Assembly: GCF_902713615.1 (NCBI RefSeq)
Contig: NC_052165.1
Location: forward strand, 19,162,522-19,226,521
Source of the DNA: Scyliorhinus canicula
Taxonomy: Eukaryota
Direction: 5' to 3'
Length of the DNA stretch: 64,000 bases
Shown: piece by piece, positions 1 to 62,373 of the stretch
Layout of the letters: every line of letters starts with the position of its first letter
Position numbering within the stretch: position 1 is the first letter of the stretch
Notes under the pieces: generated by a model
Seen by the model: the letters and a program-made list of their open reading frames with translations, nothing else
Told to the model about the DNA's origin: nothing
Databases searched by the model: none
Program-made: the position numbers and the translations under genes

Positions 1-994
1 GGTGGATTGAACATGCTAAATTGCCCCTTAATTGGAAAAAATGAATTGGGTACTCTAAATTTTTTTTTTAAAGTAGGAATTTGACCAGTGGTGATGATGG
101 AATTGCAAAATCTCCAAGTCTGTTTTGTGACTTGGAGTGAACTTGGAAATTATGATGTTTCCATGTACCTGAACCTCTTGTTCTTCTGAATGATGAGTTC
201 ACAGGTTTAGTGGGTGCTGCCGAAGAAACCTTGATAACTTGCCGCAGTGCATCCTGTAGTTGGAAGCACTGTAACTATGGTACTCAAATGGGGGAAGGAT
301 TAAACACCCAATCTGGTGATTGGAGGGCCAATCAAGCAGACTGTCCTGATGGTGCCGAGCTTCTTCAATTCTGTTGTTGCTGCACCTATCCAGGTAGGTG
401 GAGATCATTCCACCATACTCGTATATTGTGCCTTGCAGCTGGTGGAGAGGCTTTGAGTCATCACTTGCTAGAGAATATGCAACCTCTGACTTGCTGCAGT
501 GGGCATGGCATTCATGTGGCTGGTCCAGTTGAGTTGCGGTTTAACCGAGTATTCTGAATTTAACAACAGCAGACTTCTTTCAGTAACCTGTCAGGCTGAC
601 TAATACAAATGTACAGTAGGAAATGCGTCTTCCTTGAAACTGATAGGCTGGGAATGCTTTGATCAATGTAACTTAAGAGCCATGGGATAGGCTGGGAAGG
701 CTTTGATCAATGATACCGAAGAGCCATGGACAAATAAGAGGCTGCTACTCACAGTGCTGCTTCTCAGTGGCTGGCATTCTCCATTCCCTGCTGCTGTGAT
801 TGGGAATCCCGGTCAGGCGGAGAATGGATCTTCAGCTGAAAAATGGGATCGGCGATGGGCGGCAGTCCCATTCCCATTCTCTGCTTCCCTACTGCCGGCC
901 ATTGTGTGCTACCCACCCTGCACCACCAGAAACATGCAAAGTGTTGATTTGGATGCATTAGTAGCATGCAATTAATGGGCTGGAGCCCGCTCTC

Positions 995-1040
<46 letters not shown>
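995..1040. repeat. Poly-C tract (others at ~4764-4788 and ~31307-31347)
   Basis: Read directly from the sequence. Confidence 0.9.
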
Positions 1041-4000: not shown

Positions 4001-5517
4001 GTACGTTTCTTTGTTTTATTGCTGCTGGTGAAATCACACTTGTGGTAAGTTATTAACACCTATGTTTGCAGGTAAAAATATTTTTTATTTGAAAAGTGTT
4101 AATGTCACATTTACAAGAGTAATTTCCTTAATGTGTGTTTTTTTTTAAGAAGCGGTTTCCAGAATTCAACCCTGGTTACCAATGATTCTTTTAACAATTA
4201 TTTATAAACATCCATAATAAGAGAAATATATATTTATTTAAAAAATTATTCTGAACTCTTGCACACATTTCTTTTGGCTAGAATAACCATCTTCATTGTG
4301 GGGGAGAATTGGACTCTGTGGATGTGCACTTTCACCTGTCTGCAGTCTGTTTCTTTCCCGAAGTAGATCAATACTTGATCATAGAATTTACAGTGCAGAA
4401 GGAGTCCATTCGGCCCATCAAGTCTGCACCGGCTCTTGGAAAGAGCACCCTACCCAAGCCCATACCTCCACCCTATCCCCATAACCCAGTAACCCCACCC
4501 GACACTAAGGGCAATTTAGCATGGCCAGTCCACCTAACCTGCACATCTTTGGACTGTGGGAGGAAACCGGAGCACCCGGACGAAACCCACGCACACACGG
4601 GGAAAACTTAGTGATCTAAGCACCAACAATAGGAACACGAGGGCTGGGATTTTCCGCTCCCATTTACATCGGGCGGGTTTGGTGGCGAGAGGGGAAAATA
4701 TCACTAGATGGCCAAAATCGCATTTCATGTCAGGCTTAAAGACCGTAGCGATCGTCCCTTACAGCCCCCCCCCCCCCCCCCCCCCCCCAAAAACCCCCTT
4801 CAAAGTTCTGAACCTCATTGTAACACGTCATGCTTGGGCCCATACGCCAGAATCATCCCCCAGTGTCAAATAATTCAAATAATAACAGCGACGGACATCT
4901 CCTCTCCAAAGACTTGCAGCTGACGAGTGATACACCGAGGGAAGCATGGCAGCGTGTGCAGTGCTCTGATGGCCATCTTTCCGACTATAATATATTTGAT
5001 ATGTTCTTTTTACCATTCCGAGTTCATTTTAATAGTGGCAGTGGGGTAAGGGAAGGGGGCATGTTTGATTGGTAGCGGCATAAGTAGTTATCAGCAAAAT
5101 TGTGTGAATTGAGGTATTCTATTGATCCAAGCAGCTCTCTTCAAAAGTACACCGCACTAATATCACTTCCCTAGTATTAAACCTATTTTCATGGTACCAA
5201 TCATAGTGGCAGGGCAAGTCACCCATGAAAATGATATTGTATTCACTGGTCTATAATCCTGGTTCAGGGCTCAGGTTTTGAATAGCATTGACGTTGTACT
5301 AAGATGATCATTTTCATTGGATTCCTTTTACTGGTACACCCCTCTCCAAAATATTCATTATTCTTGTTAATGAGTTTTAATAAGGGAGACAACAGATGAC
5401 TATCCACTTTTACAAACATCAACTGTGTTAATAACAAAGTGAGTGGAATATTGATTTATCTAGAATGCAGATTTTAATCTGTTTTATTAAAAGATTCTTT
5501 GTTCTGTTATTTTGCAG

Positions 5518-30607: not shown

Positions 30608-31306
30608 GGAAAGCCAAGCATATCGAGGATCACTGAGAGAGCACTGGGCGGCGGCTGAGGAATCGTGTGTGCGTTGGGCGGGAGGGGAGGACGCATTGGG
30701 GGGGAGTGGGGATAGTGGGGCAGAACCGAGTGGGGCAGAGATGTGCAAGAAACATTAAAATGCCCTCACCACATCCGGAATGATGCCTCTGGCTCTTTGT
30801 TCCACAATGCGGGCTGACAACCAATCCCATGCCACTTGTCCCCCATCCAACCCAACACGCCATGCCCAGTGTGAACATGTACCCAGGGCTGGGGCCCATC
30901 CCCTGGGTGATTTAAGGTTGGCTGCTGCGTCTGTGGTGTTGCCTCCCGCAGTGTTCAAGCACAGTGTCCATTCATCAAGGTGTGATTGGGACACTAGACA
31001 ATGAGCCCCAAATACTACATGGTACGCCCACCCGTGGGATCCACTTGGGATGTGAAGTGCTCACTTAACCACGATTGCCAATTCCCATGAGTAATAGCTT
31101 AAAGCCGCACAGCCTGAAGTCTCCATGATCAGTTGGAGTTATGGGTGATTGTTGGACTAACAGGCAGGGACCAGGGTTGCCCCCGGAACGGGACCACGCA
31201 GTCCAGGGGTTGGTATGGAGGAACCCACCCCCCGGCACGGCCAACTGCCCCCCCCCCCATCAGTGCACCCCTCCCTCTCTTCCAGTGGAATCCCCTCTGC
31301 CCCAAT

Positions 31307-31349
<43 letters not shown>

Positions 31350-31684
31350 CTCACTCTCTGTGAGTGAAGATGGCCGCTCACCTCCTTGGCTCCCCGCAGC
31401 AGTTTATCTGCCAGATTCATGTTTTTGAAAAGGAGTACTAATCGGTGCCAGCGTGGCCACTTGCTGGGGAGGCTGCTGGATCGCGGGAGGCCATTGGACA
31501 TGGGATGGCTCTTGTTAATTGTATGAAAAAAGGGTTTATGTGGTGATAATTTGTTTCTTGCCGCGCTACAGTGAGATCTTGATTTTGCCTACGGTAGCGG
31601 GCCGATTGCATTGCAAACTGTTTGGCACCTGCCGCAGTTCTCGTTTTTGGCCTCTCCCGCTATTCACCAATCTTGTTGAGCACC

Positions 31685-32312
31685 TCCGCACCTTTAGGGG
31701 CTAGTCCCGCACCTTTAGGGGTTAGGCCTGCCTCGGAGTGGTTGGCGCCCCGCCGGCTGGCGTGGAAGGCCTTTGGCACCATGCCAGTCGAGGCCGAAGG
31801 GACTCCGCCGGCCGGCGGGGGTTCACGCATGCGTGGGAGCACCAGCGGCTGCTGACGTCATCCCCGCGCGTGCGCGAGGGGAGGGTGTCACCTACGCGTT
31901 GGCCATGGCGGAGGCTGATAGTCCGCGCGTAGGAAAAGAGTGCCCCCTCGGCACAGGCCCACCCACGGATTGGTGGGCCCCGATCGCAGGCCAGACCACC
32001 GTGGGGGCAACCCCCAGGGCTAGATCTCCCCGTGCCTCCCCAGGACCCCGGAGTCCGCCCACGCCGCCAGGTTCTGCCGGTAAGGGATCTGGTTCAATCT
32101 ACGGCAGCGGGATCGGCATAGAAGCAGCTGGACTTCGGCCCATCGCGGGCCGGAGATTCGGCGGGGCGGGGGGGGGGGCGGGGCAGACCGGCGCGGCACG
32201 ATTCCCGCCCCCGATGAATCTCTGACCCGAGAATTCTGTGGCTGGCGGGGGCGAGATTCACACCGCCCCCCCGCCGATTCTCTGACCCGGCCGGGGGTCG
32301 GTAAAACCCGAC
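31685..32312. mobile_element. Inverted, one-end-truncated copy of the 51866-type MITE
   Basis: Reverse-complement similarity (ccgcacctttagggg..., gctgacgtca, ggggtcggtaaaacccgacc). Confidence 0.7.
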
Positions 32313-32314
32313 CA

Positions 32315-32690
32315 TGGATTCTGCTAACTGCTGCACTGCCCTTGCGTCATCTGGAACCTGCACCAGGAGGTATGTCCGTATCAGCCTCCATATTACCCTC
32401 CTCCAACTCCTCCACTTCTGGTGGTAAGTCATTTTCTGGGTGAATACTCAGTCCACGTTGAAGGGAAAAGTTGGGCACAACACACTCCATGACTTTCTGT
32501 CATGACTTTCACCTTCACAATTAATGTAGGGTGGCAGTTAGAGTTTGGCTTCAGATCATCCTTCAACATTTCACAAAGATGTCCCAATGCTTCCTTGCTG
32601 AAGCACTGTCTTGTAGCACACATCTCCCCTGACATCGTTTCTATGACGTCCTTTGCCTGTGCGCTCTCAGGGGTGGATAATTGATTCACT
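32315..32690 (-). pseudogene. Internally deleted Harbinger transposase fragment (different subfamily)
   Basis: MSGEMCATRQCFSKEALGHLCEMLKDDLKPNSNCHPTLIVKVKV resembles the HARBI1 N-terminus. Confidence 0.6.
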
Positions 32691-34533: not shown

Positions 34534-34782
34534 CACATTTGGAATGTGGCCGGAATTCTCCAGTCATTGGGATCCTCTATTCCCGCTGGTAGCGCACTCC
34601 TGCCCGTGGGTTTCCTGGCAACATGGGAGTTGCTTCCAGCAGTTCAGAGAGGGTTCACTCGACTCATTCCTTCGATTAAGGGCTTATTAAGGAAGGTGGA
34701 GGTTACAAGAATGAGAGGTGATTTTAGTGAAACACACATAGCCAAGATTTTCCACTCCCATTTGAGTTGGGTGGGTTGGTGG

Positions 34783-35895
34783 CAGTCAATAAGAGGGTCA
34801 TTTAGGAGTCTGGTGACAGTGGGGAAGAAGCTGTTTTTGAGTCTGTTCGTTCGTGTTCTCAGACTTCTGTATCTCCTGCCCGATGGAAGAAGTTGGAAAA
34901 GTGAGTAAGCCGGGTGGGAGGGATCCTTGATTATGCTGCCCGCTTTCCCCCGGCAGCGGGAGGTGTAGATGGAATCAATGGATGGGAGGCAGGTTCGTGT
35001 GATGGACTGGGTGGTATTCTCGACTCTCTGAAGTTCCTTGCGGTCCTGGGCCGAGCAGTTGCCATACCAGGCTGTGATGCAGCCCGATAGGATGCTTTCT
35101 ATAGTGCATCTGTAAAAGTTGGTAAGGGTTAATGTGGACATGCCGAATTTCCTTAGTTTCCTGAGGAAGTATAGACGCTGTTGTGCTTTCTTGGTGATAG
35201 CGTCGACGTGAGTGGACCAGGATAGATTTTTGGTGATGTGCACCCCTAGGAATTTGAAACTGCTAACCATCTCCACCTCAGCTCCGTTGATGCTGACAGG
35301 GGTGTGTACAGTACTTTGCTTCCTGGAGTCGATGACCAGCTCTTTAGTTTTGCTGGCATTGAGGGAGAGATTGTTGTCGTTACACCACTCCACTAGGTTC
35401 TCTATCCCTCCTGTATTCTGACTCATAGTTATTCGAGATCCGGCCCACTATGGTCGTATCGTCAGCAAACTTGTAGATGGAGTTGGAACCAAGTTTTGCC
35501 ACGCAGTCGTGTGTGTACAGGGAGTAGAGTAGGGGGCTAAGTACGCAGTCTTGTGGGGCACCGGTATTGAGGACTATTGTGGAGGAGGTGTTGGTGTTCA
35601 TTCTTACTGACTGTGGTCTGTTGGTCAGAAAGGCAAGGATCCAGTTGCAGAGTGGAGAGCCAAGTCCTAGGTTTTGGAGCTTTGATATGAACTTGGCTGG
35701 GATTATGGTGTTGAAGGCGGAGCTGTAGTCAATAAATAGGAGTCTGATGTAGGAGTCCTTGTTTTCGAGATGCTCTAGGGATGAGTGTAGGGCCAGGGAA
35801 ATGGCGTCTGATGTGGACCGGTTGCGACGGTATGCGAATTGAAGTGGGTCAAGGCGTTCCGGGAGTATGGAGGTGATGCGCTTCATGATCAGCCT
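34783..35895 (-). mobile_element. Rex1/Babar-type LINE, RT and C-terminal region, one frameshift (~35420), truncated at both ends
   Basis: [58 protein letters not shown]. Confidence 0.9.
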
Positions 35896-37624: not shown

Positions 37625-37999
37625 CAGTGCAATGAAGTTGCTGCAAAAATCCACTAGTCGCCACATTCCAGCACCTGTTCGGGTACACTGAGGGAGAATT
37701 CAGAATGCCCAATTCACCTAACAAGCACGCCTTTCGGGACTTGTGGGAGGAAACCAGAGCACCCGGAGGAAACCCACGTAGACACGAGGAGAACGTGCAG
37801 ATTCCGCACAGCCAGTGACCCAAGCCGGGAATAGAACCCGGAACCCTGGTGCTGTGAAGCAACAGTGTTAATGCAGGGACAGAGTCTGCAATGGTGTCCA
37901 CGGGGGCACAATGTAGGCCGCTGGACTTGATTGGGCAAGGGGCTATGCACCATGCTACATGTCATCCTTTCACCCCCTGAACACAATGAATATTTGAAT

Positions 38000-38760
38000 A
38001 CAACCAACAATGGCGGCCTTCCTGCTAGTTGCCGCAGTTCAGGGGGGTGCACTGCTGTGTATGAGCTGGAGCTTCTCGAGGAAGAAGAAGCTGTAGCAGC
38101 GGGGGCATGCCCCAGAGGAACAGGTGGCAGCCACTGAGGATGGAGACCTGGCCGCCCTACAGGCCGAGGAGGAGGTGCAAAGGAGGCACCACATGAAGAT
38201 TTGTGTGTACCGGCACTGTCTGTCATTCGAGGACCTCCCAGCCGGACCAGGCATGCCGTCGAAGACTCCGGCTGAGCAGGGGGACTGCGATATATCTGCC
38301 AGATGATGGGGACTGGGGGAGGACACCCACCTGCAGTTGCTGTCAAGGTGACGATTGCCCTGAACTTCTTCACCACGGGCCCTCCCATGTGCTGAGTGGG
38401 GACCTGCCCGGTATCTCTCAGAGCTCGGTGCACAGGTACATCCGTGCAGTCATAAAGACCATATATGTCCAGTTGGCACAAAACATCCATTGCAATGTGA
38501 ACTGAGCCCACTAGGGTGCCCAGACAGCGGAGTTCACTGCGATCAGTAGATGCCCCACGTCCAGGTGGGGATCGACAGGATGCATGTCGCCCTGCAGATG
38601 ACAGGCCATTCAACCAACCCGCTCCAGGATTCCCACCTGCTGCACCACGTGGGTGCGAGCCCTGGGTTGGCAGTAACAGCGGATATGGTCCACGGGATGG
38701 AGGATGATGATAATCCGCTCTGCGATGATCTCTGGTGCACCGTATCATTTGACAACGTCT
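38000..38760 (+). pseudogene. Harbinger transposase N-terminal half, frameshifted
   Basis: VYRHCLSFEDL, CRRRLRLSR, VAVKVTIALNFF, GDLPGISQSSVHRYIRAV and VQVGIDRMHVAL in successive frames. Confidence 0.8.
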
Positions 38761-38764
38761 GACT

Positions 38765-39518
38765 CCTGCCCATGGTTACTGAAGAGAGAGAGAAAATCCA
38801 GGGCAGGACAGAGCACTGCTTGTTTTAGCTCTGTACAGAGCTCCAGGTTCTCTGGGTCACAACCTATACACAAGTAACTTAACTTGGGAACAAAGCAGTA
38901 TGAAGATGATTTTGTGAGGTATGGTTTTGTCAATTGTGTCAAAGCAAATAAGGATGCAAAGTCCATGTGTGTTATATGCAGGGAAGCACTGGCAAATGAG
39001 AAGAGAAGTTTCAGATTTTGGAAGAGAAGAGGTGGGTGAAAAATTCCTTTTGAGTTTGAGACCCCAGAATCAGTTATTAACTTGCAGCTGATTCCAAATG
39101 CGAAGACTACACTGCTGTACCTTGCCTGTGACAGCACACTAAAAACACACCAAAAGCTTACGGGACTGTCAGCATTGTTGAGTAACATCTCCCATGAGTA
39201 GCCAATGCTAAATAAAACAAGCATTTTGTTACTATTGCATTTCACGACAGCCTACATCTGTGAGGTTAGATTTTCCATTCTCACAAAGGTGAATACGGCA
39301 CAAATTAACTGGCCGAAGTCTGCACCTGATATGCGCATTACCCTCTCCTCTTGTGAATCTGATTAGAGTGAGATCGCGAGGACCAAGCAGGCTTCCTTTC
39401 ACATTAACGGTAACTGAAGGTCAGCTGGCATAGGTCACGAAGGTCGCCTGGCGTGGGTCGCGAAGGTCAGCTGGTTGGCAAAAGTGGGCCCCAGTGGAAA
39501 AAAGTTTGAAAAACACTG
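38765..39518 (+). mobile_element. Internally deleted hAT-Charlie/Buster DNA transposon
   Basis: N-terminal KQYEDDFVRYGF...CVICREALANE (BED-finger-like). C-terminal LHFTTAYICEVRFS...DMRITLS...KQASFSH*. Right TIR ...tttgaaaaacactg. Confidence 0.8.
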
Positions 39519-42399: not shown

Positions 42400-45150
42400 T
42401 ATGCCCTGACCCCACCTTCCCCCATATCTCTTGATCACCATAGCTCCTTCTTGAAATCACACAACGTTTTAGCCTCAACTACTTTCTGTGGTGGTGAATT
42501 CCACAGATTTACCACTCTCAAGGTGAAGAACTTTCTCCACATCTCAGTCCTAAAAGGTTCAAAGCATATCCTCAAACTATGACCTCTAGTTCTGCACTCC
42601 CCCACCATCGGGAACAATCTTTCTGAATCTACCCTGTACAATCCTGTTGGAATTTTATAAGTTTCTTTTCATAAAATGTTATAATTTTAAAAAATATCCC
42701 CTCTCACTTTTCTGAACTCCAACGAATATAATCCTGACTGCTTCAGTCTCTCCTCGTGTGACATTCCCGCCATCCCAGGAATCAGCCTGGTAAACCTTTG
42801 CTGCACTCCCTCCATAGCAAGAACGTCCTGTTCTGTGCTGTACTGTTCTATGTTCTATGTTCTATCCTTCCTCAGATAAGGACACTAAAACTGCACACAA
42901 TATCCAGGTGTGGCCTCACCAATGTCCGAAACAATTGCAGCAAAATATCTCTATTCCTATACTCAAATGCTTTGAAGGCCAACATACCATTTGCCTTCTT
43001 TACTGCCTGCTGTACCTGCACGCTTACTTTCAGCGACTGATGCGCAAGGACACCAAGGTCTTGCTGTGTATACACCACTCTCAATTTACACCCATTCAAA
43101 TAATAATTCCTGGGAGGTATTCTCCCCCACCTCCCACCTGCCGGGTGGGAGAATCGCCGGGGCGCCGCACGAATTGCGCCACACTGCCCCGAGCCCCGCA
43201 CGTGATTCTCCCACCCCCCTTGAAACCAGCGCCGCGCGAATCGCGCCGGGCTGCTCGGAGAATTGCCGCAAATGGCGAGCGGCGATTCACCGGCCCGATT
43301 GGGCCAAGCAGCTGGCGAAAAAAGTGACAGTCCCACCGGTGCCATTCTAACCTGCTCTCAGGCCGCTGGACCTGGGGCTTCAAGGGCCAGGAGTGGCCTG
43401 TGGGGGTGGAGGGGGGTTTCTAACCCCGGGGAGGCCCTCCAAAGTGGCCTGGCCCGCGATTGGGACCCACCGATCGGCGGGCTGGCCTCTCTGCTGGCGG
43501 GCCTCCTTTCTTCCGACATTTTTGTGCGGGCCGGCCTGGAGGAGGACGGCCACCGCGTATGCCTTAGTTGGCGCAGGCCCAACTGCGCATGCACGGAACC
43601 AAAGGCGTCGCGTCTTTTACGTGGTGCCGGGTCTCTGACTACACGCCGAGGCCCCGTCCCCGTAAATCACGCGACGTTCCTTCTAGCCCCACGGAGGGCG
43701 GAGAATAGCGGTTTGGGAACAGGCGCCGACCCCGGAGTAAAACACTCCGGTTTTTACTCCGGCGTCGGCACTTAGACTCCCGTTGGGAGAATCCCGCCCC
43801 CTATTTTTGCCACCCAAGTGGATAATCTCATATTTATCCACATTATACAGCATCTGACTTGGTATATGCCCACTCACTCAGCCTGTCCAAATCCTGCTGA
43901 AGCATCTCTGCATCCTCTTCACAGCTCACCCTCCCACCCAACTTTGTACCATCTGCGAATTTGGAGATACATTTAGTTCCCTCGTCCAATTATATAATGT
44001 GAACAGTTGGGGTCCTAGCACAGATCCTTGCAGTACTCCAGTAGTCACTGCCTGCTAATCAGAAAAATACCCATTTATTCCAACATTTTGTTTCTGTTTG
44101 CTAACCAGCTTTCTGTCCATCTCAAGAGACAACCGTAATCCGATGCGCTTTAACTTTACATATTAATCTGCTATGTGAGACCTTATCGAAGCCTTCTGGA
44201 CGCCTAAATAAGCCACATCATATGGTTCTCCCTGGTCAACACCACTAGTTACATCTTCAAAGAATTCTAGTAGATTTGTGAAGCATGATTTCCCTTTCGT
44301 AAATCCATGCTGACCTGATCTGATTTTACCACTGCTTTCCAAATGAAATCCTTGATAATGGACTCTCGCAACTTCCCTACTACCGACGTTAAGCTCACTG
44401 GCCTATAGTTCCCTGTTTTCTCTCTACCTCCCTTTTTGAATAGCGAGGTTACATTCGTTACCCTCCGATCTGGAGGAACCATTCCAGAATCCAAAGAATT
44501 TTGTAAAATGACCACCAATGAATCTACTTTTTCTCGGGCCATTTGTTTAGTACTCTGAGATGAAGATGATCAGTCCCTGGTGATCTGTCTGCCTTCACTC
44601 CTGTTAATTTCCCCAAAACCATTTCTTTACTAATACTAATTTCCTTCAGCTCCTCACTAAAACTTGTGTTTCTCCGAATCTCTGGTACATTATTTATGTA
44701 ATTTCACCCTTCTTTATCAATACCTTGGTCTGCCTTTGCTGAATTTTAAACTGTTCCCAATCCTCAGGTCTATTGTTTTTCTGCTAATTTATATGCCTCT
44801 TCTTTGAATCCGATACTATCTCTAATTTCTCATGTAAGCCATGGTTTGGCCACAGTTCCTTTTCTATTCTTATGCCAAATAGGAATAAACATCTTTTGGA
44901 GTTCACATATTTGTTCTTTGAATGCCTGTCATTGTCTGTCTGCTGTCCTTCCTTTCAGTAATGTTTCCCAGTCCATCATAGCCAGTTCATGCCTCATACC
45001 ATCATAGTTACCTTTACTGAGGTTCAGGACCCTGGTCTCAGAATCAACTACCTCACCATTTACTTTGATAAAGAATTTTACCATATTATGGTCGCTCATC
45101 CCCAAGGATTCTCTCACAATTAGATTGACAACTAATCCTTTCTCATTGAC
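42400..45150 (-). mobile_element. CR1/HER1-like LINE (ORF2 remnant)
   Basis: LFKKGGREKTGNYRPVSLTSVVGK, LVRPHL, RTRGHSL, FFTLRVVNLWNS, LGMSDHNMV. Confidence 0.9.
43112..43799. mobile_element. Harbinger-type MITE inserted in a CR1 LINE, TSD CCT
   Basis: cct|gggaggtattctcc ... ggagaatcccgccc|cct. CR1 sequence continues on both sides. Confidence 0.85.
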
Positions 45151-50862: not shown

Positions 50863-52870
50863 GAGCTGGATTCTCCGTTCCGCGACATCCGAAGTGCGTT
50901 TCTTGATGGGACAGAGAATTGGATGTCGGGGGAAAATCGGGATCGGCGCCCACATGCTCTGATCCTACTCACTGGTGCCAAAGTCCATCTGAGGGCTTCC
51001 ACCAACAGTGCACTACCTGCCCACGCGTCCCCTACCAGATACCCCCACTGAAGGAACCCCCCCACAGAGACCCTCTAACTAAAGGGACTCCCTACTGCAA
51101 CCTCCTAACTAAAGGTGCCCCCCACAGGGACTCACTAACTGAAGGAATCCACCATAGGGATCCCCTAACCAGAGGGACCCCCTCAGAGACCCCTTAAATA
51201 AAGGGGCCTCCGGACTAAGGAACCCCCCACAGGAGTCCCCTTACTGACGAAACCCCACAGCAGCGGGTTGATGGAAGCTGTCAATCACAGTCCACTACTG
51301 GAAAGGAATGAATGGCTTGCAGTTAATGAATCAGTAGGGTTGAAACAGAGGTCACAGCTGTTTCCCTTCCAGGAATAGATATGTGGAGCTTCAAGATAAG
51401 TGTTAAAGCTGTAATTCGTCTCACTACTCCTGTCTGGGGTCTCTTTATTGGAGGGTTGGTCCCCGTATAGAGATCCCTGGGGATCTGCCTATTTCATGGC
51501 TCCCTGGAGGGTCCCTCATTGCAGGGGGCCCTATGGAGGGTCTCCTTATTACAGGGGTTGTTATGGGGGGTCTCCCTATTACAGGGGTCCCTGAGTGGAG
51601 GGCGGGGGAATCTGATAGAGGGGGTGTGGACAGGAATGCATTGTGGGGGGTGGTGGTGTCTTTCGGTGGGCTCAGATGATCTCTACCAGCGTGGCCCTGG
51701 CATGGTGGACTTTGCAGGGATATCTCATTGAGGTGGGGGGGGGGGGGTGTTGCCCCCATGCCCCATTGCAATGTCCACCAGAAGAGAAAAGAAATGATCC
51801 ATGCCCACGTGATACCCGGCTGCGGGGACTGAAGAATCACGGCGGGCCTGAGCATAGGGTACCAGGGGCGAAATTCTCCGACCCCCAGCAGGGTCGGAGA
51901 ATCGCCCGGGGCCGCCGAAAATCCCACCCCGCCGTGGCAGAAATTCTCCGCCACCCGGCAATTGGCGGGGGCGGGAAACGCGCCGCACTGAGCGGCGAGC
52001 CCCCTGCGGCGATTCTCCGGCCCGCGCTGGCCCTAAGTCCCGCCGCTGGGAGGCCTCTCCCGCCACCGAGGTTTGGACCACCTCTGGTGGCAGCAGGATC
52101 GGCAGCGCGAGCAGGCCCCCGGGGTCCTGGGGGGGCGCGGGGCGATCGGACCCCGGGGGATGCCCGCATGGTGGGCAGGCCCGCGATCGGGGCCCACTGA
52201 TCGGCGGGCGGACCAGTGCCATGGGGGCACTCTTTCTCTTCCGCTGCCGCCACAGCCTCCGCCATGGTGGATGCAGAAGAGAATCCCCCAGCGCGCATGC
52301 GCCGGTGGTGACGTCAGCGGCAGCTGCCGCTGACGTCACCACCGGCGCATGCGCGAACCGGCGAAGGCCTTTCGGCCAGCCCCGGCGCCGGGCGTCAAAG
52401 GCCACTGGTGCCGGTTTTGGCGCCAGTCGGTGTGGTGCCAACAGCTCCGGCGCGGGCCTAGCCTCTCAATGTGAGGGCTTGGCCCCCAAAGGTGCGGAGA
52501 ATTCCGCACCTTTGGGGAGGCCCGACGCCGGAGTGGTTGGCGCCACCCCGCTGCGCCGGGACCCCCCGCCCCGCCGGGTAGGGGAGAATCCCGCCCCAGG
52601 TCTGCGAAATGGATGCAAACGGATCATTAAGACAAATTTGCATTAGTTTACATGCTCCCGTTGGTGTGCAGCATTGACCTCAATCTCGGGGGTCAGAGCA
52701 TCGCGTTTGGGTCGGCGTGCGTGTCGATCTCTATTTTCCCCTTGCATCTGATCTCTGACCCATCAGGGAACGGACCCCTCATCTCAATTCCTCTCCACTC
52801 CTGCACTGAGGCTTCCATTGAAGCACGGGGAAATCATAGAGCTTGCTTTCTGACAGAGTGAAAATTTTCA
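50863..52870. mobile_element. Large older Harbinger-type element that hosts the 51866 MITE and a ~30-bp minisatellite
   Basis: Starts with TIR-like gagctggattctcc. GC-rich subtermini surround an AT-richer core. Confidence 0.45.
51866..52596. mobile_element. Young GC-rich Harbinger-type MITE (731 bp), TSD CAG
   Basis: cag|gggcgaaattctcc ... ggagaatcccgccc|cag. Central 64-bp palindrome. Confidence 0.85.
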
Positions 52871-52898
52871 GTGTTCACCAAGTTAAATTCAGTTTGAG

Positions 52899-53131
52899 GG
52901 GCAGCACGGTGGCCTAGTGGTTAGCACAACCGCCTCACGGCGCTGAGGTCCCAGGTTCGATCCCGGCTCTGGGTCACTGTCCGTGTGGAGTTTGCACATT
53001 CTCCCCGTGTCTGCGTGGGTTTCGCCCCCACAACCCAAAAAAAATGTGCAGAGTAGGTGGATTGGCCATGCTAAATTGCCTCTTAATAGAAAAAATAATT
53101 GGGTAATCTAAATTAAAAAATTTTTTTTTTT
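52899..53131 (+). mobile_element. Short-tail HE1-like SINE with a 16-bp TSD (ttaaattcagtttgag)
   Basis: TSD at 52883-52898 and 53132-53147. Confidence 0.9.
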
Positions 53132-53387
53132 TTAAATTCAGTTTGAGAATGATTGCCAGCATTTTCTCCAACCATAATTGCATATTCCAATTACGATGTG
53201 GAGGCTTTCTTTAAGTTTACTTGTGTTAGCCTCTCATTGTTTGGCATCTTCTGCTCTGACGGGCAGCCGCTCAACAGCACATTTCGCACAAGCTGCATCT
53301 TTCAAATTAAAAGGCAACTCAAAGTTTCCTGGCTGTCTGCATTGAATGTAATGGTCTAAGGTGAAACCTCTGCTGGTGGGACTCTCT

Positions 53388-53875
53388 GGGCGCGATTCTC
53401 CGCCCCCCACGCCGGGTGGGAGAATAGCGGGAGGGCCTCCCGACATTTTTCACGCCCTCTCGCTATTCTCCCCCTCCCACGCCCGACTCACGCCACGAAA
53501 AACGGCGAGCGCCGATTCCCCGAGGCCGATGGTCCGAGCGGCGGGGTCTTCGCGCCCGTTTCAACACGGCAGCAAACACACCTGCTTGCTGCTATCGTGA
53601 AACGGGCACCAGATGCCCATTTGGGGCATCTAGAGGCCCGATTGGCACGGCAGTACCACGGCCGTGCCAAGGGGGGCATAAGCCCGCGATCGGTCTTGGC
53701 CCACATCTTGCGGGACGGCTGAGGGAAAAGCCGCCGTGACGCATGGGGCCGCGCTCCTAGCCCCGCCCGGGGGGGGGGGAGAATCGGCCCCGGAAGTAGG
53801 CGTGAAGGCTGCCGTGGGTCACGACCTGTCCCACAGCAGCCTTTACATTCTCCGCATTTGCGGAGAATCTCGCCC
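53388..53875. mobile_element. Harbinger-type MITE, TSD TCT
   Basis: tct|gggcgcgattctcc ... ggagaatctcgccc|tct. Confidence 0.85.
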
Positions 53876-54464
53876 TCTGTTTCGCTTGCAATGCAACCCC
53901 ACCCCGCGGTTTTTCCAGCGGCGTGAAGTGGTCACAATGGGAAATCCCATTGGATGGCGGCAGGGAGAATCCTGCTGCCAGTGATGGCACGCCGCTATGG
54001 AACACATGGCTGAGGAGGCTGAGAATTGTAGGATCTCTCACTGTGACCTTCATTATTGTAATCGTCTGTCTATTTTCAATGATTTAGATAAAAATTATAC
54101 TTTAAAATTAATCTGAATTTCTCCATATTTAATTGCTAGGTTGTGATGATCTAATTAATTTAAAGTGGTATAATTATATGCTTGGCTTAAACAAAAATTG
54201 TTCGCCAGAATTCTTTGATTCCATCAAATCTGTTTGGTGCCTGAAAGTTGACTATGTGTCCTGCCTCTGCAGCCTGCCTCACCTGTTTCGTATCAGATCT
54301 CGGGCTAAGTGGGACCAGAAAAGTGCAGAAGGTGCATTTTTAGGCCCTATCCATTGCTGGAGAATAATCATGGTGTCACACGTGTGCAGATGAAATTGAG
54401 GGAAACGCAATCTTTGCCATATTTCCCATGATTTAGCCACATTGAATTTTGGTTAGAATCCAAA

Positions 54465-60689: not shown

Positions 60690-62373
60690 GTGGGTGTGTA
60701 AATGAAGCTTTGCAAAATGTAATTCATTGATAAATTTTTGATCCATGGATGATTAATGGACATGTATCTTTGAGGCAGAATTCAGAAGTGAGCAGAGGAA
60801 ACACTCTCTGGTAGTCTCTGCTGGTTTGAACAGGAGTGGCAGACTTGTCGACATCAGAGAAAGAGATGGGGTGAGACTTGGTTTGATTGATTGGCTGGTG
60901 GCTAATAAATTGGCCTCAGAGGCCCTACACTGCCCGGTAATAGGTGTTGATTGGCTCCTATCCCAGTGGAATTATTTTCAGAGTTCCGAGGAGTTTCAGT
61001 TTTATCCTGGCAGCATTGAGACGAGGGGCGGGATTCTCCGACCCCCCACCGTGTCCCGAATTCTCTGCCACCCGAGATTCGGCGGGGGCGGGAATCGCGC
61101 CGCGCCGATTGGCGGGCCCCCCACGGCGATTCTCCAGCCCGCGCTGGGCCGATGTCCCGCCGCTGACATGCCTCTCCCGCCAGCGTGGATTAAACCACCT
61201 ACCTGACCGGCAGGAGCAGGCGGCGCGGGCGGGCACCGGGGTCCTGTGGGGGCGCGGGCCGATCTGACTCTGGGGGGTGCCCCCATTGTGGCCTGGCCCA
61301 CTATTAGGGCTCACCGATCGGCGGGCGGGCCTGTGCCGTGGGGGCACTCATTTTGTTCCGCCTTCGCCATTGTCTTCACCATGGCGTCAGCAGCCGCTGA
61401 TGCTCCGGCGCATGTGCAGACTTACGCCGGTCGGCGAAGCCCTTTCGGCCCTGGCTGGCGTGGCACCAAAGGCCGTTCATGCCAGCCGGCGGAGCGGTAA
61501 TCACTCTGGCGCGGGCCTAGCCCCTCAATGTGAGGGCTTGGCCCCTAAAGGTGCGGTGACTTCCGCACCTTTGGGGAAGCCCGACGCCGGAGTGGTTCAC
61601 TCCAACGCGCCGGGACCCTCTGCCCCGCCGGGTAGGGGAGAATCCCGGCCAAGGTCCTGCTACTCTCTCTCCTCCGATTTTTCTCCAGAAAAGCTGGGAG
61701 TACTGTATTTCTTAACTTGCAGAGAATCTGAATGAATCAATCTACAGGAAAACCATTACAGGCTGCAAACAAAGATCAGAACCTGCTATCTCTCCAGAAA
61801 GGCCCTTGAGTACTGTAATTCTGAAACTACAGAGACCTAAATGAACCTACAATAAAGTCACAAACTGAAACCATAGTTTGAAGAGGAGTGAAGTGCTGTA
61901 AACCATGAATCCTGCCCCCGCCGTTCTCCCAATTCCGCACCTTTGGGGCGGCCCAACGCCGGAGTGGTTCACGCCACTCCGTCCCAGCGGAACCCCCCGC
62001 CCCGCTGGGTACGGGTGAATCCCGCCCTCTTTTCCCCCTCATGATTTACTTATGATTTTCTATCCCTTTCTTCCCCTCTGTGTTTCTCTGTCTTGTGTGT
62101 GTGGGTGTGGAGGGTGAAGGCAAGTTAAAGCGGGGAATTTGGAATTAGATAATAATTAACCAATTGTACTTGCTGCATATTTCATTATAGTTCTTTTCAT
62201 AAATAAAAAGTAATTATGTTTACATTTAAAATCTGGTAGCTGGAATTATTGGTCAGCCAAGGACCAAAGAGTTTGAATATTTTTCTAAGAATTTTTGGTT
62301 AATTCATGGATGTGTTGCGACTCTGGATCAAGAAGGGCTGGAATTGACTGTGCACTTGCCAGGGTGTCAGAAC
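60690..62373 (+). mobile_element. Probable solo LTR interrupted by two MITEs
   Basis: CCAAT-like gattgg boxes, AATAAA, ends gggtgtcagaaca. Similar in composition to the LTR-like 16285-16970. Confidence 0.45.
61026..61650. mobile_element. Harbinger-type MITE, same family as 51866-52596
   Basis: gag|gggcgggattctcc ... ggagaatcccggcc|aag. Collinear with 51866-52596. A partial sister copy lies at 61920-62027. Confidence 0.8.

What the first reader, a model, noticed from the sequence alone, without database searches (positions are those of the whole stretch)
52292..52355. Perfect 64-bp palindrome NRF1-CRE-Ebox-CRE-NRF1 inside a young CpG-rich MITE: a possible portable, methylation-switchable promoter cassette
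Seen: cgcgcatgcgccggtggtgacgtcagcggcag|ctgccgctgacgtcaccaccggcgcatgcgcg is a spacer-less perfect palindrome. It contains GCGCATGCGC (52293-52302, 52345-52354), TGACGTCA (52309-52316, 52331-52338) and a central CAGCTG. Sister copies keep parts: TGACGTCA at 31853-31860 flanked by NRF1-like words, decayed sites at 61382-61417, and paired NRF1-like words at ~43556-43592. Known: NRF1 and CREB/ATF sites typify CpG-island promoters and binding to both is blocked by CpG methylation. Inference: this MITE family may scatter bidirectional CpG-island-like regulatory modules or cruciform-forming sites through the genome.
Basis: partly seen in the sequence, partly recalled or inferred. Interest (0 to 1): 0.7.

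Follow-up and report, generated by a model that had tools for sequence, protein, structure and literature searches.

The report
Transposon palindrome perfected by template switching
A flawless 64-base DNA palindrome in a shark genome is real, but it is a one-off copying accident that tidied up and lengthened a shorter, imperfect palindrome carried by thousands of copies of a small jumping gene; nothing here shows that it switches genes on.

Summary
Window 52292-52355 is a spacer-less, 32+32-nt, 100% complementary palindrome with two GCGCATGCGC words, two TGACGTCA words and a central CAGCTG.

It lies in a ~735-bp non-coding, GC-rich (72%), CpG-rich (o/e 0.86) element with 15-nt terminal inverted repeats. 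Word depth on the element in two DNA runs is 10^3-10^4 times that on the flanks.

The perfect 64-mer does not look like the family's state. Two older in-window sisters and the read-derived consensus carry a ~54-nt quasi-palindrome. Its left arm has a 4-nt bulge (GTGA) that completes the only full CRE, and its centre is shorter.

In this copy the left arm matches the family. The right arm is the exact reverse complement of the left, with a net gain of 10 nt and a second CRE. That is the signature of a template-switch mutation on a quasi-palindrome, a known mutation type.

The copy is not young. It has at least 34 differences from the family majority, yet none between its arms.

The NRF1-CRE-NRF1 cassette is family-wide, and this scan has already noted it on other DNA of this genome. 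Promoter or methylation-switch function is untested: one oligo-dT RNA run shows no starts there. Whether a few other copies share the 64-mer could not be checked.

The parts
52292..52355 (.). Perfect spacer-less 64-bp palindrome
   Evidence: I1: 32+32 nt, 100%, 0 nt apart. (DNA hairpin -48.1 kcal/mol, z -14.4).
52292..52323 (+). Left arm, which keeps the family's sequence and is the inferred template. It holds the NRF1-type word 52293-52302 and the CRE 52309-52316.
   Evidence: 26 of 32 columns match sister c31k by my hand count. Positions 52300-52321 equal the first 22 letters of the read-derived consensus (table 7, place 52340).
52324..52355 (+). Right arm, the inferred newly copied strand. 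It holds the second CRE 52331-52338, new in this copy, and the NRF1-type word 52345-52354.
   Evidence: Sisters and the read consensus have a right arm 10 nt shorter, without the TCAC that completes a CRE. About 15 of 32 columns match c31k by my hand count.
52321..52326 (.). Central self-complementary CAGCTG, the likely switch point
   Evidence: Sequence. A family variant reads A at 52327, in 17-24% of depth in the DNA runs and the majority in X14, together with a 10-nt gap at 52330 (tables 3 and 4).
51865..52597 (+). The host element: a ~735-bp non-coding, GC-rich transposon copy with terminal inverted repeats (51865-51879 and 52583-52597, 13 of 15 complementary)
   Evidence: Word depth jumps from 40-85 to 10^5 at about 51866 and falls after about 52597-52603, with heterogeneous loose ends there. 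No Pfam family in its ORFs. GC 0.725, CpG o/e 0.86.
52484..52517 (.). Second family hairpin (15-nt arms, 4-nt loop), one of about nine palindromic modules in the element
   Evidence: Also present in c61k and in the fragment at 61931.
31684..32317 (-). Sister copy c31k with the short quasi-palindrome (one CRE at 31853-31860)
61024..61656 (+). Sister copy c61k. It has the short right half; the left NRF1 word and most of the CRE are deleted.
43106..43800 (+). Distant relative c43k with decayed paired NRF1-type words
61931..62027 (+). 3'-terminal fragment of a further copy
   Evidence: (D16)

Best explanation
The 64-bp palindrome is a derived, locus-specific or at most rare version of a ~54-nt quasi-palindrome. 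That quasi-palindrome belongs to the consensus of a very abundant non-autonomous DNA transposon of a shark genome.

The family form reads: NRF1-type word, full CRE, GC-rich centre, half CRE (TGACG), NRF1-type word. Its left arm carries four extra bases (GTGA).

In this copy, or in its immediate progenitor, a DNA polymerase switched template within the quasi-palindrome, probably at the self-complementary CAGCTG found in a family variant. It copied the left arm as template and returned in the shared outer NRF1-type word. One event therefore replaced the right arm by the exact reverse complement of the left. It added a net 10 nt, created a second TGACGTCA and made the palindrome perfect.

Shown: the two states, which arm is conserved, and that the new letters are the exact inverse of the neighbouring letters. 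Inferred: the replication or repair mechanism, the switch point and the timing after insertion.

The result is a duplicated CRE and a cruciform-capable site. No regulatory activity is shown.
For: - The palindrome is perfect with no spacer.
- Sisters c31k and c61k share the same shorter right side, TCAGCAGCCGCTG(G/A)TGCTCC..CGCATG, with no second CRE.
- In two independent DNA runs, 83 and 67 contigs break at 52340. Their loose letters agree at 0.81-0.83 on a form lacking 6 nt at the centre and TCAC in the right arm. A 10-nt 'left out' at 52330 and the variant 52327 C>A are also seen. None of the listed pieces spans the palindrome without gaps.
- The left arm matches the family and the right arm does not.
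- The copy differs from the family majority at 34 or more of ~670 other positions, 12 of them CpG-to-TG/CA changes. There are 0 differences between the arms and 0 against the family consensus over the 22 letters (52300-52321) it covers. My estimate for no change in 64 nt at that rate is P about 0.04.
- Template switching that homogenises and expands imperfect inverted repeats, and can duplicate a transcription-factor site, is documented (PMC13100816; PMC7202029, PMC7954356 and PMC8794818).
Against: - The ancestral allele at this very locus was not seen. The short form is known only from paralogous copies.
- Read depth over 52307-52337 does not drop. Contigs can lie on either arm of a perfect palindrome and most rows of the tables were not shown, so a minor subfamily with the 64-mer cannot be excluded.
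- That the A-variant (GGCAGCTGACG) is the progenitor rests on a row for 52322 being absent from a truncated table.
- No read-level confirmation of the 64-mer at this locus could be separated from family reads.
Confidence: 0.75

Rival explanations
1. The perfect 64-mer is ancestral, at least to a subfamily master. The common 54-nt form arose from it by deletions that stabilise a palindrome, and this copy simply inherited and kept it.
For: - Perfect palindromes are deletion-prone (general knowledge).
- The 6-nt central difference is flanked by a GCTG direct repeat, which would allow slippage.
- Depth over the right arm does not visibly drop.
Against: - The more diverged in-window copies already have the short form, and so does the read consensus.
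- This route needs two deletions plus a base change, against one base change plus one switch.
- A copy with about 5% private change elsewhere would have to keep 64 CpG-rich bases untouched.
- At most of the places listed in the read table, the copy's own letters make up under 10% of the family's depth (under 1% at several), and 10-43% at the rest. So they look mostly like private changes and not subfamily markers.
Confidence: 0.12
2. The palindrome is an assembly or polishing artefact, and the real locus has the 54-nt family form.
For: Locus-specific read support could not be isolated. GC-rich hairpins are hard to sequence.
Against: - The artefact would have to insert exactly the 10 nt that make 32/32 symmetry while both flanks continue in normal family register.
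- Fold-back artefacts of long reads are usually far longer (general knowledge).
Confidence: 0.04
3. Whatever its origin, the cassette works: a portable, bidirectional, methylation-gated NRF1/CREB promoter or CpG-island seed. This copy, with a doubled CRE, would be a stronger version.
For: - The motif words are far above chance and inherited by the family.
- All copies meet sequence criteria of CpG islands and keep CpG o/e 0.85-0.90 despite 26-51% divergence.
- NRF1 and CREB1 are methylation-sensitive factors acting on mouse IAP elements (PMC12420836; PMC9729108).
- Inverted-repeat perfecting can change promoter output in yeast.
Against: - One RNA run gave 392 reads in 15 million, 1-4 over the palindrome, and no place where reads begin. 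Most reads run on into unlike sequence, so they come from other copies inside transcripts.
- The NRF1-type words in three sister copies are all mutated.
- No gene start was found beside it in the window.
- No methylation, chromatin or binding data are available.
Confidence: 0.12

Closest known systems
Quasipalindrome-associated template-switch mutations (Ripley model; inverted-repeat homogenisation and expansion)
   Same: An imperfect inverted repeat becomes perfect and longer. One arm is conserved and the other is rewritten as its exact reverse complement. A cluster of changes is explained by one event, and a transcription-factor site in the conserved arm is duplicated (PMC13100816, PMC7202029, PMC7954356, PMC8794818).
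   Different: Here the ancestral state is inferred from paralogous transposon copies and a read consensus, not from an orthologous locus. The substrate is a transposon's internal module in a shark. With 32-nt arms and no spacer, it is at the long end of reported short-range events.
Methylation-gated NRF1/CREB1 sites in mouse IAP and LINE1 promoters
   Same: A transposable element carries CpG-containing NRF1 and CRE-type motifs whose binding is blocked by methylation (PMC12420836, PMC9729108).
   Different: Those are promoters of autonomous retrotransposons with shown binding and transcription. This is a non-coding DNA transposon that needs no promoter, and no binding, methylation or transcription data exist.
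MITE families that amplify transcription-factor binding motifs (for example plant MITEs)
   Same: A high-copy non-autonomous element spreads a motif cluster through a genome (PMC5950925, listed).
   Different: The host is a vertebrate, the motifs are of the CpG-island type, and the element is much more GC- and CpG-rich than typical AT-rich MITEs.
Earlier notes of this scan on the same family in the same genome (s1-237858, s1-203737, s1-231821, s1-249269)
   Same: Same cassette: a ~53-base palindrome with two NRF1-type words, plus a CRE, inside an abundant element rich in palindromes.
   Different: None of the notes shown describes a perfected 64-bp version or its origin by template switching.

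Membership tests
Template-switch (quasipalindrome-correction) mutation | The derived state is a perfect inverted repeat where the earlier state was imperfect | tested here: met
   Perfect 32/32 here. The imperfect ~54-nt form is in sisters c31k and c61k and in the read consensus. The earlier state comes from paralogues, not from the orthologous site.
Template-switch (quasipalindrome-correction) mutation | All clustered differences are explained by copying the adjacent arm in inverse orientation | tested here: met
   The right arm equals the reverse complement of the left arm at every base. Against the A-variant short form, one replacement (3 nt by 13 nt) accounts for everything. The A-variant itself is inferred.
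Template-switch (quasipalindrome-correction) mutation | One arm is conserved against the ancestor and the other is rewritten | tested here: met
   The left arm matches about 81% of columns in c31k and is identical to the read consensus over 22 nt. The right arm matches about 47% and is 10 nt longer (hand counts).
Template-switch (quasipalindrome-correction) mutation | The pre-event allele is seen at the same locus in an outgroup or another individual | not testable with these tools
   The single read-laying run could not separate this locus from thousands of family copies. No relative's assembly is at hand.
MITE / non-autonomous DNA transposon | Terminal inverted repeats | tested here: met
   51865-51879 against 52583-52597, 13 of 15 complementary. 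The same termini occur in c61k and c43k.
MITE / non-autonomous DNA transposon | Short, non-coding and high copy number, with sharp ends and unrelated flanks | tested here: met
   ~735 bp with no Pfam hit in its ORFs. Depth of 10^5 against 40-85 on the flanks, with low-agreement loose ends at both ends.
MITE / non-autonomous DNA transposon | Target-site duplication | tested here: inconclusive
   No clear duplication flanks 51865/52597. 'CCA' is possible on both sides but may be part of the terminus, because other copies also have CCW there. No empty site in the window.
PIF/Harbinger superfamily (as earlier notes of the scan call it) | 3-bp TWA target-site duplication, and an autonomous partner with a DDE transposase and a Myb-like ORF | tested here: inconclusive
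   TTA or TAA is not evident at this copy's ends. No autonomous partner in the window. The superfamily is left open here.
CpG-island-type, methylation-gated bidirectional promoter | CpG-island composition with NRF1 and CRE motif words | tested here: met
   GC 0.725 and CpG o/e 0.86 over 741 bp. Motif words at 8-10 times chance. This concerns sequence only.
CpG-island-type, methylation-gated bidirectional promoter | Transcripts start at or beside it, in both directions | tested here: inconclusive
   One oligo-dT RNA run gave 1-4 reads over the palindrome and no clustered starts (tables 2 and 6). The library is 3'-biased and the reads are multi-copy.
CpG-island-type, methylation-gated bidirectional promoter | Hypomethylated and bound by NRF1 or CREB, with activity lost on methylation | not testable with these tools
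   No methylation, chromatin or binding data. Indirect hints point both ways: CpGs are retained in old copies, but the NRF1-type words in the sisters are mutated.

The most novel reading that the evidence does not exclude
The family's NRF1-CRE-NRF1 quasi-palindrome is a working, methylation-gated regulatory module, a mobile CpG-island seed that stays hypomethylated in the shark germ line. This would explain why even old copies keep CpG o/e near 0.9. Template switching within it would then be a recurrent way to make stronger, symmetric double-CRE versions or cruciform-prone fragile sites at individual loci.
Probability: 0.1. Interest if true: 0.65.

Novelty: new member of a known kind. Interest (0 to 1): 0.3.

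Why it matters
As it stands, this is a clean vertebrate example of a known mutation type. One template switch turns a transposon's quasi-palindrome into a perfect 64-bp palindrome and duplicates a CRE. It is useful as an illustration and as a caution: the most striking copy of a repeat need not show the family's design.

The wider question belongs to the family, not to this palindrome. It asks whether an extremely abundant, CpG-rich shark transposon spreads NRF1/CRE modules that act as methylation-sensitive regulatory elements, and why its old copies keep their CpGs. That question needs methylome and transcription-start data. If such data were positive, this locus would offer a natural 54-mer versus 64-mer comparison.

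Tried and rejected
- Two pattern scans of metagenome contigs for other copies, one for the cassette with a variable gap and one for the family's second hairpin, both found nothing.
- The word-based protein search with the spurious ORF across the palindrome, meant to reach other copies through called ORFs, found nothing. I did not repeat it with the minus-strand ORF because of its cost.
- A search for an empty insertion site or flank homologues in the window, to define a target-site duplication, found none.
- An Rfam scan of 51000-54200 gave no family.
- Pfam on three ORFs inside the element gave none, so coding readings were rejected.
- A paper search for the NRF1-type word together with 'transposable element' gave 0 papers. 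A search for catshark, Harbinger and MITE gave nothing specific.
- The scan's notes by sequence and by place near the window gave nothing beyond the finding itself.
- I considered the strand flip of RNA reads near 52120-52150 as a sign of divergent transcription. I rejected it because the reads carry high-agreement loose ends, so they come from a few other loci, and the flip is not at the palindrome.
- I considered the whole element as a fold-back. I rejected this because only about 15-20 terminal nt are inverted and the palindrome is off-centre.

Full report
**Observation**

The window reads a spacer-less palindrome at 52292-52355. The repeat finder gives arms 52292-52323 and 52324-52355, 32 nt each, 100% complementary, with nothing between them (letters).

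It holds GCGCATGCGC at 52293-52302 and 52345-52354, TGACGTCA at 52309-52316 and 52331-52338, and CAGCTG at the centre. Both words are enriched in the window:
- TGACGTCA has 3 matches against 0.35 expected.
- GCGCATGCGC with at most 1 mismatch has 5 matches against 0.46 expected.

As single-stranded DNA the 64-mer folds into one 30-bp hairpin at -48.1 kcal/mol. Shuffles average -17.9, giving z = -14.4. The corresponding stretches of two sister copies fold no better than shuffles (z -0.28 and -0.21).

**Host element**

The palindrome lies in a GC-rich block with GC 0.725 and CpG o/e 0.86. The window as a whole has GC 0.464 and CpG o/e 0.48.

I laid contigs of two DNA runs from different samples and studies on 51780-52680. 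Word depth is 40-85 on both flanks and 10^5 to 4x10^5 on the block. It rises at about 51866 and falls after about 52597-52603. The loose ends there agree poorly (0.38-0.5), which means many different flanks.

The ends, 51865-51879 and 52583-52597, are inverted repeats (13 of 15), and the same termini are seen in other copies. ORFs across the block have no Pfam family, and Rfam finds nothing.

The block also contains about nine short palindromic modules, including a 15-nt-arm hairpin at 52484-52517. So it is a very abundant, non-coding transposon copy with terminal inverted repeats, and 'MITE' is a fair label.

I could not define a target-site duplication, and there is no empty site in the window. 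I therefore leave the superfamily open. Earlier notes of this scan call the family Harbinger-type and the genome a catshark's; I did not verify either.

**Is the 64-mer the family's form?**

The window holds three further copies and a fragment:

| Copy | Coordinates | Identity to this copy |
|---|---|---|
| c31k | 31684-32317 (-) | 69% |
| c61k | 61044-61656 (+) | 73% |
| c43k | about 43106-43800 (+) | distant |
| fragment | 61931-62027 | (3' end only) |

c31k has the left NRF1-type word, one CRE, then a right side 10 nt shorter with no second CRE. c61k has lost the left word and most of the CRE by deletion. It has the same short right side as c31k.

The reads agree. In the two DNA runs, 83 and 67 contigs align only from 52340 rightwards. 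Their unaligned letters agree at 0.81-0.83 on a sequence equal to this copy from 52300 to 52321. After that it lacks six bases at the centre and the TCAC of the right CRE (table 7).

A 10-nt 'left out' at 52330 and a variant 52327 C>A (17-24% of depth in the DNA runs, the majority in X14) are also reported. None of the listed long pieces crosses the palindrome without 14-22 gap letters (tables 3, 4, 8).

The family form is therefore a ~54-nt quasi-palindrome. Its outer arms, with the NRF1-type words, pair. Its left arm carries a 4-nt bulge (GTGA) that completes the only full CRE. Its centre is GCGGCCGC, or GCGGCAGC in a variant.

**How the 64-mer arose**

Relative to the family, this copy's left arm is unchanged. 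Its right arm is the exact reverse complement of the left. By my hand count, the left arm matches about 26 of 32 columns in c31k and the right arm only about 15 of 32.

Starting from the variant with the CAGCTG centre, a single replacement gives the 64-mer. Three bases between CAGCTG and CACCGG are replaced by 13 bases copied from the left arm. This is the signature of a template switch at a quasi-palindrome. The nascent strand re-pairs at a self-complementary site, copies the other arm, and returns in the shared outer repeat.

The mechanism is documented:
- It homogenises and expands imperfect inverted repeats, and it can duplicate a transcription-factor site carried by the conserved arm (PMC13100816).
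- It was worked out in E. coli (PMC7202029).
- It is seen in great-ape and human genomes (PMC7954356 and the human study listed).
- It can create and maintain hairpins (PMC8794818).

The step from two observed states to this mechanism is inference. So are the choice of the A-variant as progenitor and the switch point. The A-variant rests on one contig in X14 showing the 10-nt gap and 52327A, with no listed change at 52322 in a table that is truncated.

**Age**

The copy is not young. At 34 or more positions outside the palindrome the majority of family reads carry another letter. Sixteen of these are G>A or C>T in this copy, and twelve of them fall at consensus CpGs by my reading of the context. 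That is at least about 5% divergence.

In contrast, there are no differences between the two arms, and none between the left arm and the family consensus over the 22 letters (52300-52321) that the consensus covers. At 5% per site, the chance of no change in 64 bases is about 0.04. So the arms were most likely made identical after much of the copy's decay, or they are kept identical by repeated correction.

**The rival that the 64-mer is ancestral**

This rival is not excluded. Palindromes do lose bases, and depth over 52307-52337 does not fall. However, contigs of the left arm can also lie on the right arm: 1153 contigs fitted two places.

Against it:
- The more diverged sisters and the read consensus have the short form.
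- Its uniform structure shows inheritance, not recurrent deletion.
- This route needs more steps.

I give it 0.12. An assembly artefact gets 0.04, because the inserted letters are exactly those that give 32/32 symmetry and both flanks stay in family register.

**Function**

What the sequence shows is that the family carries two NRF1-type words and a CRE, and that this copy gained a second CRE.

NRF1 and CREB1 are methylation-sensitive factors, and NRF1 activates unmethylated IAP elements in mouse germ cells (PMC12420836; PMC9729108).

Nothing here tests it:
- The oligo-dT RNA run gave 392 laid reads out of 15 million. Of these, 346 lay only partly on the stretch and 78% ran on into unlike sequence.
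- Only 1-4 reads covered the palindrome, and there was no place where reads begin.
- The library is 3'-biased, so this is weak evidence either way.

In the three sister copies every NRF1-type word has been hit, several by CpG-to-TG/CA changes. No gene start was seen nearby. The only protein domains found in the window belong to a LINE remnant at about 34.6-35.9 kb.

**An unexplained point in the family's favour**

All four in-window copies keep CpG o/e 0.85-0.90 although they are only 49-74% alike. This copy and c61k share 45 of 72 CpGs at 74% per-base identity, so CpGs are lost no faster than other dinucleotides.

Either most differences are differences between source copies, or these elements are little methylated in the germ line. 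Nearly all CpG-island-like stretches of the window are elements of this kind.

**What failed**

Two metagenome pattern scans found no further copy. A protein search with the spurious ORF across the palindrome also found none. A census of the 64-mer across the genome therefore remains the decisive missing computation.

**Verdict**

The feature is real and striking. It is best explained as one instance of a known mutation type acting on a transposon module that this scan had already noted on other DNA of the same genome. The regulatory reading is open at family level and unsupported for this copy. Interest 0.3.

Noticed in passing
window 31684-32317, 43106-43800, 51865-52597, 61024-61656: All copies of the family keep CpG o/e 0.85-0.90 (window mean 0.48) although they are only 49-74% alike. 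This copy and c61k share 45 of 72 CpGs at 74% base identity, so CpGs are lost no faster than other dinucleotides. This suggests either subfamily differences or low germ-line methylation.
   Followed up: partly
window 53390-53980: A second, different CpG-rich element (o/e 0.8-0.97) has related termini (GGGCGCGATTCTCC ... GGAGAATCC) and its own 19-nt-arm hairpin at 53418-53472. It lies 800 bp from the first, with a tRNA-derived SINE (52890-53100) between them.
   Followed up: no
window 51866 (left end of the element), from reads: Loose letters of family contigs just before the left terminus end in AAAGAYCTT in two runs (agreement 0.39-0.5). Part of the family may sit in a preferred target or inside a longer element.
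   Followed up: no
window 51842-52616, RNA run X22: The strand of RNA reads flips near 52120-52150: the left half is mostly '-' and the right half mostly '+'. The reads carry high-agreement loose ends (0.93-0.96), so they come from a few expressed copies elsewhere.
   Followed up: partly
window 34644-35886 (-): LINE remnant: an RVT_1 reverse-transcriptase domain (35380-35886) and an ALKBH8_N-type domain (34644-35426). Longer ORFs at 37714-39245 (-) have no Pfam match.
   Followed up: partly
window 981-1040, 4760-4790, 31305-31350, 51740-51752: Long homopolymer C or G runs, up to about 45 nt, recur at several places in the window.
   Followed up: no
window 52221-52643 (+) and 51728-52441 (-): Because of the palindrome, spurious ORFs on both strands encode the same 20-residue peptide (HAPVVTSAAAAADVTTGACA). 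This is a curiosity with no sign of coding.
   Followed up: yes
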